A stretch of 64,000 nucleotides of DNA from NCBI GenBank assembly GCA_977030845.1, contig OZ365109.1, positions 42,284,001 to 42,348,000 of the forward strand, in the 5' to 3' direction. This DNA is from Fimbriosthenelais zetlandica (lineage: Eukaryota). Below the pieces are notes generated by a model. That model saw only the letters and a program-made list of their open reading frames with translations, did no database searches and had not been told where the DNA came from. The position numbers were made by a program, and so were the translations under genes. This document shows positions 34,701 to 40,700 of the stretch, piece by piece (within the stretch, counting starts at the first letter, position 1; each line of letters begins with the position of its first letter).

Positions 34701-37700
34701 CTGAAGCCTGAACACATAACGTATATCATATTTTTTTATTGACACGTTACTGTCTTACCATGGGGTATATAATTTAACAGTAATTTGCAATGAGAAGAGT
34801 TGCACCTAGAAGTGGGGAAATAGGGCAAAGAGTTACAATGTAACAAATCTGTTCCGACAAGGAGCAAATATTATCTCACACGATTGGTTGCAAAAAAGGC
34901 AATCATTGAACTTATTTTCGAAACTTTTGTTTTAATTAACCTTGGCATTACTTTGTTATTTATATCTATACAGATGATTCTCGACATTATGAAACTATTT
35001 CATGAAAATAATATTATGGACTTCAATATTGAAGAGCTTTCAAACATATTTCTTTTAAAATGGAGAGATTTAGGCTTCCTATAGATTCATGATCAGATGC
35101 TGTAAACATCCAAAATTTACAAAATAACGAAAAGTGTTGACTTCTGCAGGGCATTCTGTACCAAATTCCTACGGCACCAGTTACACAAATAAGCTGAGGC
35201 ACTATATATGCATGATATATGTACTTCTCTAACCTGGCAATTGTTTTTTGTTTCTTCCAGTCATATCAACAACCTCGCGACTTCCAACGTGCACAAGCCC
35301 GTCCATTCGAAGCACCACAAAGACCCCATCCTCCTCCACCCCCTCCTCCAGAACCCCAACCAGAATATAGGCCCCAGCCACAGTAAGTATCTAAATCATT
35401 CGGAGAAAGTTACTTTTGAATGTTTTAATATTTTACAATTTCAATAACTAGTTCGTGGAATTTAGCATAACTTGTCATAAGATTTAGCATGATATTTCAT
35501 AAAATAGCCTAACAGAAAAATGTGTGATGTGTAGGACTATCCTGAGTAATTTAAAACGATTAATCGTAAATTAACTTTTGTTATTAATTCTAGAGCTCTG
35601 TCTATTGTAATTATAAAATAAATGTATATGAGAGCATATATATGTTAATAATGTTTGAAAATGTTTTTCTATAAATTCTTTGCGCAATATTAAAAAATGG
35701 CGATTCACTTTTGTAAGGCAGCTGAGATCAGTGTCTGAGCTGAGATCCACACAATTTGCTGTCTGTAATGAAGGAAAGGCCTTTGCAGATTTGCGTGCAG
35801 ACATCTTGGGTTGAAAGCATTTCAAGTTTATTTCGATTTTCAACCAAAGCAGACTGATAATGATAATTGTCTAATCAGATTGTCAAGATTTGTTAACAAG
35901 GCAAAGTTGAGGACCAATCTCATTATTCAGTCTCAAATTTATACTCTAGCAGCGAAAGTTGTCCCATTTCCTGCAGATCCCCGATGTGCCATTATGACAT
36001 GTATGGTCAAACACGTCGCGCTGAAAATGAAAATCTAGGTGGTCCTACCCAGTCTGGTACCTTTAACGTGCTGGCTAGTTTGATGTCCAATCAAGGTAAG
36101 GCATAGAGACATGCCCAAAGCCATGAAACACCTGAAGCATGCAGACGATACAGCTCAATGCTTGTCCCTCTCTCATGCTCTCTTACTTACTATTTTATCT
36201 GCCGGGTGTTCTCATCTACCTTTTTGTCCTATTGATTGTCAAATCCAATCCAAACCTATCACCCAGTCCTCTATAACCAAGTCCAATTATCGTATACAAG
36301 TACGAGATGGTACCTCAAGAATATACCAAGGATACTATCCTTGAATATACCCCAGGTTTCTTTATGTTGGGAGCCATGTAAACATAGCATTGATTCGGAC
36401 CAAATGAAGCATAAAGAACAATTATATTTGTGTCAATTCTGAATCAATATTTGCTATTGAAGGGATTTGTTTTCGCATGGTCTTCTTGGCTTAATGCCAT
36501 TGATATATTTTGCTGTTTTGGGGGACCAGATTATCTTGCAAAAAGATCCTTTTGTCACGCATAATTAATGTACACAATTATCATAATATGACTGACAAAC
36601 ATTGATTATGTGTCGGTCCCTTTTTGAATAAATCACATGATATATTTTTGCAGTGATTTTAGCTGTTCGACCCCAAGTTATGTTTTTGACTATGCAATAG
36701 GAGATTCCATCTCGTTTCAACTTAATTAGGGAAATGGAACATACGTATATATCTCATGCCCTTTCGCCAGTCAAAGGGCTTTTTGAAATCCCAAGTGATT
36801 AACCTTTCTTATCAACTCGCCTGGTGCCTCAGGGATTAGATGCCCTTAGATGCCATGCCACATTGCTTTGGTCCAATATAATAAATTTGATTTTTTGAGG
36901 GAAATTGCTCTGAAATGATAACCACAAAAATGCATTCAACGATTTCTTACAGGATCTCAAGGCGTTTACCAGATATAATGTACAACACAAAACCTATAGG
37001 GAAGATTTCATAAACAATTGTCTGTTTCAACCTTCAGTTTTATTTGCTTTGGTTGAGACATGGAGCAATTTCTCTTTCCCCCAATTCTTGCAGACCTCAA
37101 GCCTTCCGACCTCAATATCAACATGTGGAACCGGAAAACAAAGCTGGCGCTATTTCCCAGTCCGGCACCTTTAATGTACTGGCCAGTCTAATGGCTAATG
37201 AGGGTAAGGCAGTACCATAGAGGTCGATGTTCTAGATTTTCCTTTTCATATTAGATTTTATTGTGTTTTTTTCCTTGAGGTACATCCACTTATCCCATAG
37301 ATTCCACATTATCAGAAGGTGTTCACATGCATGTTACCAAAACCCAAATATAACCCAATTGATGTGTTTGTGGCGTTTTGGAGATAAACTTGATTGCACT
37401 TTTTTATTATTGCAGCTCGCTGGACGTCCCAATAACTATTAATTTCCTTAGATTCTTGCAGATTATAATAGAGGGAGTGAGTTTCAGAAGATAATTTTGA
37501 TATTATCTTCTGATTTGATTTTCATTTTAAATCCTTTTTTCTCTCCTTAGATCCTTAGTAGCTGAAATTTATATTGACATTTGTTACCTGAAGCTAAATT
37601 AATCCAGAAGATATGAGATTATCTTCTTATTCTATCTAGCTGTTTTTTTCTCTCCTTAGTAACAGAGATTTGGATTGACTTTGCCTCGATTGATCTAATC

Positions 37701-40700
37701 CTGGTTTCTTATGGTGATGTGATGGACAATATTGTGCGAGGTTAAAAGTTTCGTGAACTATTGCTGGTATAATCTAGAAAGCAACAATACGGATACTTTT
37801 CAGTGCGACTATATTTTCCCGGAATAAGAGCAGGTGCATGATGTATCATAGAATTGAATATTCTCGCCATTGCTATACTTTTCTATATTAAATTTATTGA
37901 GATGTATCTGATCAATGGATATTAATCCTCGGTTGATACGAGAATAAAGGCATCCCCTGTGCTGCTTCTTAATAAAAAAAAACCCACCGATTTGAAAGAA
38001 ATAGTGTTAGAATGAAATGTTATGGATATTTTTATGGATATCTTGGCAACCAGTAAAGTCATGCTCTTAATTATGAAATGGTATTGCCAACAATCAACAA
38101 ATCACCTCAATCTCCCCGACCGGAGGAAAAGGGAAACCGTTAATGGTGGATTGGTTTCAAGACAAGAGAGAATTCCATACATCAATTACTTCGGGATATT
38201 ACGGTTTCATACCACACCAATACACTACTATTTCCAAGATATCCCTTAGCCCCATGAAATATAATAATATCAGTATAATAATAGCAGCTGATAATAGTCC
38301 TTTCATTGTAACATACCCCTAGGCACTACAAATGTATGCCTAAGTAATCCCAAAATCCTATTCATATACCTTGCGGAATCCTTGCCCATAAGCCTTAGGA
38401 AATATATCATTGATAGAATAAATATTCCACTGTGAGTCTGTGTCATCAGTGTGAATGATCAGATGTTATTGATGCATTTTACCCTCTCTTCTAATAGCTA
38501 ATATATATTTTATTTAATAGCACATAAGAATCCATTGTCTTTCCCACAATGCATGAATTCATACTGGAGCAGCTGACGTTTGCTGTGTGTTTTGGGAGTA
38601 AATCTGGATATTGGAATGATTTGCTTTGTTAAATAAGTCTTCTTTGTGTGCCCATGGTTGCAGGCATGGCGCCCCTCCTCCCCAGCAATATAGCAACTTT
38701 GCAGACGAAGAGGAAACTCCTGGATTGGCGCAATCTCGTACCTTCAAGATATTGCAAAACCTTATGGATAATAATGGTAGGTTGGAGAAAAAGATTAGCT
38801 AAAACTTGCAAGCTGTCAAAATTCAAATTTTTATTAACTGTATTTTAATGAAGTCAAGTTTAGAAAAGTGCCTTGAGAAATGCATGGGCTCATCCTTACG
38901 TCTAGGAATTAAGTATACTATTATAGTGTAATTTGTATTATTAATTAAAATTCTCATTTAATTTCCATTAAAATAATGTATAATAGTTAAATATGGATAT
39001 TGAATATTCAGAATCAACTTCATTTTCGAAATATCGACAGGACACTAGTTTTGTAATGAGATAATGTTTAGAAGTGCATGGTAGTAATATTATTGAAATC
39101 CAACTGGACAAATTGGCACACCATATTTGTGCCCTTTCACCGGACAGTCAGAAGGCCAGTCGTCCTCCATGCTCCTCCCAAAACCCTTTCCCTATTATAG
39201 AAGCTTTTATTTTGCTGCATTTTTATCAGTTTTTCTGAGAATCCACTAGTCCATTTTTGTCATAATCGTGGAACAATAATTGTTCGTAGGCCTATTAGGA
39301 CAACAGTATGATATAAATTATAGATAAAGTTTATATAGTATGTTTCTGGGTAGTGATATACATTGCATATTTAACTACCGGTAGGTGAAATGGGGAATCT
39401 TCAGTAAAATAGGCCAAGATTAAAAGAAATATCTAAAAATAATTAAACAAATATTAATGATTAGTCAGAATCATCCTATCCTGCATCAAGTTTTAATCCA
39501 CTTTGCTTGGAATTTTAAATTTTTGAGGTTTTCTTTCTCTGTTCAATTGTTTTGTTTTAGCATGAGCATGTTGATTTTGTATGTTATCAGGAGAACCACC
39601 ACCTCCCGTTATGTTTGCACGTAAATCCTCAGCACCCAATTCTCCTGCTGCCGTCATAGCACCTGAGGGACCAGGTAGCAATGCTAAAATCGTGGAAAAT
39701 AGACAGTTTAATACACCCATTGGTCTTTATAACAAAAACGTTGCCATCGACACAATGGGTGATAAGATTGATAGTATGCGAATACAAGACAAACCGATCA
39801 CTGAAAGACAAAGGTAAGATTGCGCACATATCCTGAACTATTTTTGATAAAATTTAGCAAATTTCATTTCGAAAAAAATCTTCTTGAATATTTGAATACT
39901 TTCTATATCAGTAAGCATGTACCTTTTAACTAAGCAGTTTTGACGTGATAACCTTGATTAACTAACTATTAATTCTATTAATTAGTACCTGTTATGCGTT
40001 GATATTTTGTTCTGGTGATAATCAGCATGTGTTTATGTGTGTTGCTTTTTTCATGCTATGATTTTAGTGAACCTCCCGCCGCTGGTGCTAAACCCTATAT
40101 CCCCTCCGCCACTATGAAACTAGTACAGCAGATGGACGAAGAAGAAAAGGTGTATGGCCGCCCCAATTACCCTCCCCCGAAAAAAAGCAAACCCCCTGTT
40201 GGTAGGGTCCTTGAAGATTCCCCCCAGTCAGGGCCCCCTTCCAGTACTTACACCCCTAACTATAAAACCAACAAAGTCCTTGCCAACGTTTTTGGAAATG
40301 CCCCCGCGGAGGAGATTAAAAAGGCATCTCCCAGTCCAATGGTTTCCGATAAGAGGCCGTCGATCGGGGGGCCTAAAGTTTACCGAAAAGTAGAAGGTAG
40401 TTTACCAACAAAAGCGACACATGTAGATGTGACCTCTGACTCAGGATATCAAACCCCAGAGGCTCAGGCCTCACCAAACAGACTTGATCTTTCTTCCGAC
40501 TCTCAGGATCCAGTGAACCAACCATTCCATCAGAGAGTACCAAGTCGTGAAGAGGATGTGGAGAAAAATACACTAATCCAATCATTGCCCAGACCAGGTC
40601 TTCAGATGGCCCATCAAAGTCCTACAAGTACCACCGATGTGCCTGACTCATCCCTTACAGGTAAACAACAACCTATTGAAGGATATAGACCCGTAAGTAA

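What the first reader, a model, noticed from the sequence alone, without database searches (positions are those of the whole stretch)
35977..38776. Three homologous, mutually exclusive AM-motif exons in the PDZ/ZM gene
Seen: three exons (35977-36095, 37094-37203, 38664-38776) are each phase 2-in/1-out and end in the same motif ([36 protein letters not shown]). Joining any two shifts the frame, so they can only be used one at a time. Known: the motif resembles the AM (ALP-like) motif of vertebrate PDLIMs (QSRSFRILAQ / QSGSFRVLQ type). Inference: a tandem-exon-duplication switch that swaps a short docking helix between muscle types or stages. I do not recall such a cassette for this motif, but cannot check.
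Basis: partly seen in the sequence, partly recalled or inferred. Interest (0 to 1): 0.7.

Follow-up and report, generated by a model that had tools for sequence, protein, structure and literature searches.

The report
Three swappable exons in a worm muscle-scaffold gene
A probably annelid gene for a small muscle Z-disc scaffold protein carries three side-by-side versions of one short exon that can only be used one at a time; this is an ordinary kind of splicing switch on a little-studied motif, and no RNA data could be checked.

Summary
Exons A (35977-36095), B (37094-37203) and C (38664-38776) all have AG/GT borders. Their lengths are 119, 110 and 113 nt, each 2 mod 3, and each has one open frame ending in QS(G/R)TF..L...M.

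They lie in a LIM-less PDZ + ZM (DUF4749) gene on the + strand (13626-44084). Its relatives are about 300-aa annelid proteins, including one from Capitella teleta, and each carries exactly one such motif.

Including exactly one of A, B or C gives a 290-293 aa protein ending in SDF. Including none, two or three gives premature stops.

Exon C matches the family consensus. A and B carry G at an otherwise conserved R/K and lack the following K.

A and B share an identical 12-aa motif although their synonymous sites are saturated (9 synonymous and 2 non-synonymous changes in 15 codons, P = 4e-5). Both have therefore been kept as coding sequence.

Four other annelid loci have a single such exon, so the triplication is specific to this lineage.

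No RNA run was listed, so one-at-a-time use rests on frame logic and selection only.

Mutually exclusive homologous exons are already known in this family (PDLIM3, LDB3), but there they affect the ZM motif. This is a new member of a known kind, of moderate to low interest.

The parts
13626..13739 (+). Exon 1: start codon and the N-terminal part of the PDZ domain (phase 0 out)
   Evidence: It reads ATG...ACG|gtatgt. It is 56-75% identical to orthologue N-termini by tblastn.
27228..27379 (+). Exon 2: the rest of the PDZ domain (phase 0 in, 2 out)
   Evidence: Pfam PDZ_6 and PDZ match it, E 8e-8 and 2e-6. Splice sites are and tblastn to orthologues.
27734..27818 (+). Exon 3: linker after the PDZ domain (phase 2 in, 0 out)
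   Evidence: Splice sites and frame are. It is needed for the end-to-end alignment with P0036.
35261..35382 (+). Exon 4: proline-rich linker (...[10 protein letters not shown]...) that feeds the cluster (phase 0 in, 2 out)
   Evidence: Splice sites are. It matches the conserved F.T..SRPF element of orthologues.
35977..36095 (+). Alternative exon A (119 nt, phase 2 in, 1 out), ending [15 protein letters not shown]
   Evidence: Sequence and frame are. The motif HMM gives 21.8 bits. Comparison with B shows purifying selection.
37094..37203 (+). Alternative exon B (110 nt, phase 2 in, 1 out), ending [15 protein letters not shown]
   Evidence: Sequence and frame are. The motif HMM gives 23.3 bits. 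Against A it has 9 synonymous and 2 non-synonymous differences in the last 15 codons.
38664..38776 (+). Alternative exon C (113 nt, phase 2 in, 1 out), ending [15 protein letters not shown]; the version closest to the family consensus
   Evidence: Sequence and frame are. The motif HMM gives 37.0 bits. It keeps the residues that do not vary among the first 13 orthologues aligned: Q, S, R, F, L, M, N.
39591..39813 (+). ZM exon 1 (223 nt, phase 1 in, 2 out), probably optional
   Evidence: DUF4749 scores 19.3 bits, below the cut-off. It is homologous to ZM exon 2 (pairwise E 2e-6). It is absent from all orthologue transcripts seen.
40068..42292 (+). Giant exon (2225 nt, phase 2 in, 1 out), disordered, ending in a fourth motif copy ([16 protein letters not shown])
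   Evidence: The reading frame is open throughout and splice sites are. Its tail, motif and donor are conserved in a related species (L002). The start of a large open frame in L013 resembles its start.
43393..43597 (+). ZM exon 2 (205 nt, phase 1 in, 2 out): the ZM exon that follows the motif directly in all orthologue transcripts
   Evidence: DUF4749 scores 28.7 bits. It has 35 relatives at E of 1e-3 or better and is 50-72% identical to the full-length ones. The junction ...M.NE|[12 protein letters not shown] is seen in orthologues.
44000..44084 (+). Last coding exon, ending ...SASDF and a stop codon
   Evidence: Frame and stop are. It is 83% identical in the related species L002.

Best explanation
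The window holds a LIM-less member of the ALP/Enigma (Zasp/PDLIM) Z-disc scaffold family from a probably annelid genome. Its layout is PDZ domain, disordered linker, a short QS(R/K)TF(K/R).L...M.N helix motif that resembles AM, a ZM motif, and a C-terminal -SDF.

In this lineage the exon that carries the helix motif has been triplicated in tandem. All three copies keep both splice sites and the same phases, and their lengths differ only by multiples of three. The messenger therefore stays in frame only if exactly one copy is spliced in. Zero, two or three copies give a premature stop upstream of the last exon junction, and such messengers would be expected to be removed by nonsense-mediated decay (inferred).

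The result is three proteins of 290-293 aa. They differ in a linker of about 22 aa and in the helix itself. C is the family-consensus form QSRTFKIL, which has a T-x-K site. A and B are the form QSGTFNVL, which lacks both basic residues.

Shown here: the anatomy, the frame logic, homology to single-motif orthologues, and long-term purifying selection on A and B.

Inferred: actual one-at-a-time use, tissue or stage regulation, and a change in partner binding or in phosphorylation of the helix.
For: - Exon borders, phases and peptides are as described.
- Only single inclusion reaches the normal stop; every other combination stops early.
- The single-inclusion protein aligns end to end with orthologue P0036 at 53% identity.
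- The full-length and near-full-length orthologues read each carry exactly one motif, joined directly to a ZM2-type exon.
- Motif HMM scores are C 37.0, B 23.3 and A 21.8 bits, against noise of 8.1 bits or less.
- In the last 15 codons, A and B differ by 9 synonymous and 2 non-synonymous changes (pS 0.87, pN 0.058). At most 2 amino-acid changes arise from randomly placed differences with P = 4e-5. In the 12-codon motif there are 7 nucleotide changes and no amino-acid change, which never occurred in 100,000 simulations.
- Length differences between the copies are 3, 6 and 9 nt.
- The only GTRAG-type donor in A and in B is the annotated one.
- The AlphaFold model of P0036 puts a helix on residues 208-218, which is the motif.
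Against: - There is no transcript evidence. No RNA or DNA run was listed for this genome, and no protein from this species or a close relative containing A, B or C is in the databases.
- Four other annelid loci (Capitella L004, L012, L013, L015) have only one such exon. Members of five orthologue clusters show no alternative version. The cluster therefore cannot be checked by conservation outside the close lineage.
- No docking or selector RNA pairing above chance was found.
- The helix is modelled at pLDDT of only about 55.
Confidence: 0.7

Rival explanations
1. Only exon C, the consensus form, is used. A and B are leftover duplicates that the spliceosome ignores (pseudo-exons).
For: C scores far higher against the orthologue motif than A or B. 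Other annelids manage with a single exon. No transcript containing a QSGTF form was found anywhere.
Against: A and B keep an identical 12-aa motif while their synonymous sites are saturated. They also keep open frames, strong AG and GTAAGG splice sites, and length differences in multiples of three. None of this is expected for unused sequence of that age.
Confidence: 0.08
2. The exons are used in combinations with each other or with the giant exon, through undetected small exons or alternative splice sites. On this reading the cluster is a set of cassette exons and not a strict one-of-three choice.
For: The locus is modular. The giant exon (2 in, 1 out) and the two ZM exons (1 in, 2 out) can be chained in frame, for example C-ZM1-giant-ZM2 (1107 aa), or the giant exon in place of A, B or C (995 aa). 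A second GT lies 4 nt after the donor of C.
Against: No ZM-like or other open exon with phases 1 in, 2 out lies between A, B and C. Direct A+B, A+C and B+C joins all give early stops. Orthologue transcripts carry one motif.
Confidence: 0.12
3. A four-way choice: the giant exon with its own terminal motif is a fourth alternative to A, B and C. It would be spliced from exon 4 straight to ZM exon 2.
For: The giant exon has the same phases and also ends in the motif. The join exon 4-giant-ZM2 is in frame. Its tail and donor are conserved in a related species.
Against: The giant exon lies downstream of ZM exon 1. Together the two are a multiple of three (223 + 2225 nt), which fits an optional ZM1+giant insert just as well. 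The motif score of its tail is weak, 9.7 bits.
Confidence: 0.1

Closest known systems
Mutually exclusive homologous exons of vertebrate PDLIM3 (ALP) and LDB3 (ZASP/Cypher), for example LDB3 exon 4 versus the exon 5-6-7 cassette (PMC4494069, PMC9822979, PMC8002584)
   Same: It is the same protein family. Tandem homologous exons lie in the disordered region between the PDZ domain and the C-terminus. Usage is exclusive, with frame shifts and premature stops for aberrant joins (LDB3 3-6-8, PMC9822979). The vertebrate exons are used in a tissue-specific way in muscle.
   Different: The vertebrate exons swap the ZM motif. Here the swapped element is the AM-like QSxTF helix, there are three copies instead of two, and the gene has no LIM domains. 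Usage here is not shown by RNA.
Tandem-duplicated mutually exclusive exon clusters whose joint inclusion shifts the frame (Hatje et al. 2017, PMC5740500)
   Same: The exons are adjacent and similar, with the same phase and similar length. Joint inclusion leads to a premature stop.
   Different: That study's own validation criterion, splice-junction reads bridging each exon, could not be applied here.
Drosophila Zasp66 and Zasp67, LIM-less PDZ+ZM 'blocking' proteins of the Z-disc (PMC6910826, PMC9751615)
   Same: They share the PDZ + ZM architecture without LIM domains. This suggests a role as a non-growing cap in Z-disc assembly.
   Different: The fly genes are insect-specific paralogues. The annelid family has its own conserved motif-ZM block and a C-terminal -SDF/-SDL. 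No functional data exist for it.
ALP-like motif (AM) of te Velthuis et al. 2007 (PMC1781342)
   Same: The QS.[ST]F[RK].L core and predicted helix match. A [ST]-x-[RK] site is present in exon C. The same core sits in the C-terminal part of the DUF4749 match of a canonical PDZ-ZM-3xLIM protein (P0035).
   Different: AM was defined as 34 aa with two helices, lying after the ZM motif and before the LIM domain. Here only the second half is recognisable, and it lies before the ZM exon that is used in orthologues.

Membership tests
Homologous mutually exclusive exon cluster | Neighbouring exons of one gene with significant sequence similarity | tested here: met
   A and B are 80% identical over 56 nt. 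All three match the orthologue motif HMM, at 21.8-37.0 bits.
Homologous mutually exclusive exon cluster | Same reading-frame phase, similar length, conserved splice sites | tested here: met
   Lengths are 119, 110 and 113 nt, each 2 mod 3. All have AG/GT borders and phases 2 in, 1 out.
Homologous mutually exclusive exon cluster | A mechanism that enforces exclusivity (frame shift with premature stop, steric hindrance, or RNA pairing) | tested here: met
   Zero, two or three copies give premature stops in B, ZM1 or ZM2. RNA pairing is not above chance. The introns are about 1.0 and 1.5 kb, so steric hindrance does not apply.
Homologous mutually exclusive exon cluster | Transcripts show each exon joined to both flanks and never productively to each other | not testable with these tools
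   No sequencing run was listed, so read laying could not be used.
ALP/Enigma (PDZ-LIM, Zasp) family | N-terminal PDZ domain | tested here: met
   Pfam PDZ_6 scores 32.4 bits and PDZ 28.2 bits on exon 2. The orthologue model has PDZ pLDDT of about 94.
ALP/Enigma (PDZ-LIM, Zasp) family | ZM motif (Pfam DUF4749 N-terminal part) | tested here: met
   ZM exon 2 scores 28.7 bits, exactly at the cut-off. Orthologue P0036 scores 38.9 bits.
ALP/Enigma (PDZ-LIM, Zasp) family | One to four C-terminal LIM domains | tested here: not met
   No LIM hit lies in the window or within about 2 Mb on either side of it. The coding sequence ends at 44084. The gene is LIM-less, like Zasp66 and Zasp67.
ALP-like motif (AM) | 34-aa element with two predicted helices and a PKC-type site, lying between ZM and LIM | tested here: inconclusive
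   The core of exon C aligns to QSRSFRLLQ of P0035 (E 0.01), which lies inside that protein's DUF4749 match. The exon peptides alone hit no Pfam model. Only one helix is predicted. The order relative to ZM exon 2 is reversed. The figure that defines AM could not be read.

The most novel reading that the evidence does not exclude
A worm lineage may have turned the least understood conserved element of Z-disc PDZ scaffolds (the AM-like helix) into a regulated three-way, perhaps four-way, splice switch. One position of the switch keeps the basic, possibly phosphorylatable consensus QSRTFK. The others carry a long-conserved uncharged form, QSGTFN. Together with the optional ZM1+giant-exon insert, one gene could then make up to nine or more scaffold variants. 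The natural R-to-G variants would give a direct handle on what the AM helix binds.
Probability: 0.45. Interest if true: 0.45.

Novelty: new member of a known kind. Interest (0 to 1): 0.3.

Why it matters
Mutually exclusive exons in Z-disc proteins tune muscle types, and in LDB3 they mark hotspots for myopathy mutations. The function of the AM-like motif is unknown (PMC9751615). A cluster in which selection has kept two distinct versions of just this helix argues that the helix is a functional binding or regulatory element, and it supplies ready-made variant peptides for binding tests. Beyond that, this is one more lineage-specific exon-duplication switch. This scan has 52 notes that mention mutually exclusive exons in this genome.

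Tried and rejected
- RNA evidence: two sequencing-run runs (RNA on 35200-39850, any kind on 39591-44300) listed nothing (some searches were busy). Read laying could therefore not be used.
- A protein search with the giant exon found nothing.
- A protein search with a profile of the three open frames around A, B and C found nothing.
- A scan of JGI metagenome and metatranscriptome contigs for any coding of [12 protein letters not shown] gave 0 matches.
- Pfam on the exon peptides alone gave no relevant family. The only hit was a chance one to Tom37_C, below its cut-off.
- Competing RNA pairings (docking and selector sites): one site, 39251-39267, can pair both with exon A and with a site upstream of B. 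However, 9-mer inverted matches in the region number 103, against 81 +/- 12 in shuffles, so I rejected this as chance level.
- An acceptor-like copy at 37443-37462 has no open exon behind it.
- The Paralvinella locus L005 does not reach the motif and ZM exons.
- The contigs of two closer relatives (P0001, P0004) were listed without DNA.
- Complex prediction with alpha-actinin was not run, because I make no binding claim.
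Full report
**Observation**

The three stretches are exactly as described.
- A is 35977-36095 (119 nt), B is 37094-37203 (110 nt) and C is 38664-38776 (113 nt).
- Each follows a ...tgcag acceptor. A and B precede gtaagg, and C precedes gtaggt.
- Each length is 2 mod 3, and each is open only in the frame that starts at its second base.
- The peptides end [15 protein letters not shown] (A), [15 protein letters not shown] (B) and [15 protein letters not shown] (C).

An HMM built from the same motif in 28 orthologues was run over the six-frame translation of the 64-kb window. 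It scores C 37.0 bits, B 23.3 bits and A 21.8 bits. A fourth site at 42244 scores 9.7 bits, and nothing else exceeds 8.1 bits. The triplet is real and not a chance pattern.

**The gene**

The + strand carries these exons:

| Exon | Coordinates | Content | Phases |
|---|---|---|---|
| 1 | 13626-13739 | ATG, start of PDZ | 0 out |
| 2 | 27228-27379 | PDZ; Pfam PDZ_6 at 32.4 bits | 0 in, 2 out |
| 3 | 27734-27818 | linker | 2 in, 0 out |
| 4 | 35261-35382 | linker | 0 in, 2 out |
| A, B or C | see above | helix motif | 2 in, 1 out |
| ZM1 | 39591-39813 | ZM motif, 223 nt | 1 in, 2 out |
| giant | 40068-42292 | 2225 nt, ends [16 protein letters not shown] | 2 in, 1 out |
| ZM2 | 43393-43597 | ZM motif, 205 nt; DUF4749 at 28.7 bits | 1 in, 2 out |
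| last | 44000-44084 | ends ...SASDF and stop | 2 in |

No LIM domain lies in the window or within about 2 Mb on either side of it. This is therefore a LIM-less PDZ + ZM gene.

**Relatives**

An exhaustive search with ZM exon 2 found 35 relatives. A profile search found 24 proteins, most of them full-length at about 290-360 aa.
- Two carry names: Capitella teleta CAPTEDRAFT_221829 and a Paralvinella palmiformis protein.
- The full-length and near-full-length ones read, apart from the truncated Paralvinella model, share one plan. It runs PDZ, linker with F.T..SRPF, one motif close to PQSRTFK.LQS.M.NEEP, then directly .[10 protein letters not shown]...[18 protein letters not shown].
- The window's isoform exon 1-2-3-4-C-ZM2-last is 291 aa. 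It aligns end to end with P0036 at 53% identity. This supports the gene model and shows that ZM1 and the giant exon are optional.

**Frame logic**

I assembled every combination.
- Exactly one of A, B or C, followed by ZM2, by ZM1 alone, or by ZM1+giant+ZM2, reaches the normal stop. The products are 290-299 aa or 1106-1109 aa.
- With none of the three, translation stops in the next ZM exon.
- A+B and A+B+C stop inside B.
- A+C and B+C stop inside the next ZM exon.

All these stops lie upstream of the last exon junction, which is the usual trigger for nonsense-mediated decay (established knowledge, not tested here). The only GTRAG-type donor in A and in B is the annotated one.

**Are A and B used?**

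No RNA was available, so I looked for selection.
- In the last 15 codons, A and B differ at 11 nucleotides: 9 synonymous and 2 non-synonymous (pS 0.87, i.e. saturated; pN 0.058).
- With randomly placed differences, at most 2 amino-acid changes occur with P = 4e-5.
- Within the 12-codon motif there are 7 differences and no amino-acid change, which never occurred in 100,000 simulations.
- The three lengths differ only by 3, 6 and 9 nt.

Both copies have therefore been held as coding sequence for a long time. This argues strongly against the pseudo-exon reading.

**What differs between the versions**

C keeps the residues that do not vary among the first 13 orthologues aligned (Q, S, R, F, L, M, N). 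Across all 28 orthologue segments the third position is R or K.

A and B share G at that position and N in place of the following K/R. They thereby lose the T-x-K/R site that C and most orthologues have. A PKC-type site was noted for AM in PMC1781342; its relevance here is inference.

The hydrophobic residues F, I/V, L, L and M recur with helical spacing. An AlphaFold model of P0036 (27-sequence alignment) gives a confident PDZ domain (pLDDT about 94) and a helix on residues 208-218, which is the motif. The helix has pLDDT of only about 55 and sits in an otherwise disordered region.

**Is the triplet conserved?**

It is not conserved outside the close lineage.
- Genomic loci from four other annelids each contain one motif exon upstream of the ZM exon: Capitella L004, L012, L013 and L015.
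- The members of five orthologue clusters, up to seven independent assemblies per species, show no alternative version.
- A close relative is visible only as a 2.2-kb contig (L002, 83% identical in exons). It holds the giant exon's tail with its motif QSRTFNALSNMMESEP and donor, ZM2 and the last exon, but not the A-C region.
- Gene lists of two further relatives show a DUF4749-type frame (in one of them) and a 451- or 787-aa frame upstream of ZM2. This would fit a conserved ZM1-giant-ZM2 layout, but those sequences could not be read.

**Relation to known things**

The ZM motif is the FNTP.GLYS element (PMC2670261). AM was defined in 2007 as a 34-aa element specific to the ALP subfamily (PMC1781342). 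A later review says part of it is shared by all ALP/Enigma proteins and that its function is unknown (PMC9751615).

A canonical PDZ-ZM-3xLIM protein from my search (P0035) has QSRSFRLLQ at residues 371-379, inside its DUF4749 match at 278-387. Exon C aligns to it with [10 protein letters not shown] against AQSRSFRLLQ (E 0.01). Membership stays inconclusive for three reasons: the exon peptides alone hit no Pfam model, only half of AM is recognisable, and the order relative to ZM2 is reversed.

Mutually exclusive homologous exons are already described for PDLIM3 and LDB3, where they affect the ZM region (PMC4494069). LDB3 exons 4 and 6 are mutually exclusive, and an aberrant join shifts the frame (PMC9822979). 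Frame-incompatible exon clusters are a standard class (PMC5740500). LIM-less Zasp66 and Zasp67 act as blocking isoforms in fly Z-disc growth (PMC9751615). I found no paper describing such a cluster for the AM-like motif.

**Verdict**

The most likely reading (0.7) is a lineage-specific, selection-maintained, frame-enforced one-of-three exon switch on the AM-like helix of a LIM-less Zasp-like scaffold. Use by tissue or stage and any effect on binding are untested. It is a new member of a known kind, and interest is moderate to low.

Noticed in passing
window 40068-42292: A 2225-nt disordered exon has the same phases as A, B and C and ends in a fourth copy of the motif ([16 protein letters not shown]). 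Its tail and donor are conserved in a related species (L002). A large open frame in L013 begins with a similar stretch.
   Followed up: partly
window 39591-39813 and 43393-43597: Two homologous ZM exons (24% identity, pairwise E 2e-6) share the same phases (1 in, 2 out). Joined directly they would shift the frame. They are therefore either alternatives or are used together with the giant exon between them. Orthologue transcripts show only the second type.
   Followed up: partly
window 31464-32666: A 401-codon open, proline-rich frame lies in the intron between exons 3 and 4. It begins right after a tag acceptor in phase 0. It may be a further optional exon. Its donor was not resolved.
   Followed up: partly
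L010 (G000:C13:8386001-8396000, minus strand): Another ZM-bearing gene of the same genome has two tandem exons about 0.8 kb apart with related motifs (IPSKAFRMLKSMTG and IPSKSFRMLQQSIG). Both end in phase 1, and the first also starts in phase 1. Duplication of this motif's exon may be recurrent.
   Followed up: partly
L007 (G000:C1:50710001-50720000) and LIM hits at C1:50728409-50729276: This looks like the canonical PDZ-ZM-LIM gene of this genome. It has two DUF4749/ZM hits 1.6 kb apart (32.6 and 20.9 bits), reminiscent of the PDLIM3 and LDB3 exon pair. Just after the first hit lies a weak QSKTMRLLQSQL motif.
   Followed up: no
window 37443-37462: A 20-nt copy (80%) of exon B's acceptor region lies 240 nt downstream of exon B with no open exon behind it. 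A small local repeat of about 101-116 nt period follows at 37498-37682.
   Followed up: yes
window 39251-39267: An intronic site is complementary both to part of exon A (35991-36006) and to a site upstream of exon B (36917-36932), at 81% over 16 nt each. Inverted matches in the region are not clearly above shuffles (103 against 81 +/- 12).
   Followed up: yes
window 15592-15733: A run of 142 N lies in intron 1. I left it untouched.
   Followed up: no
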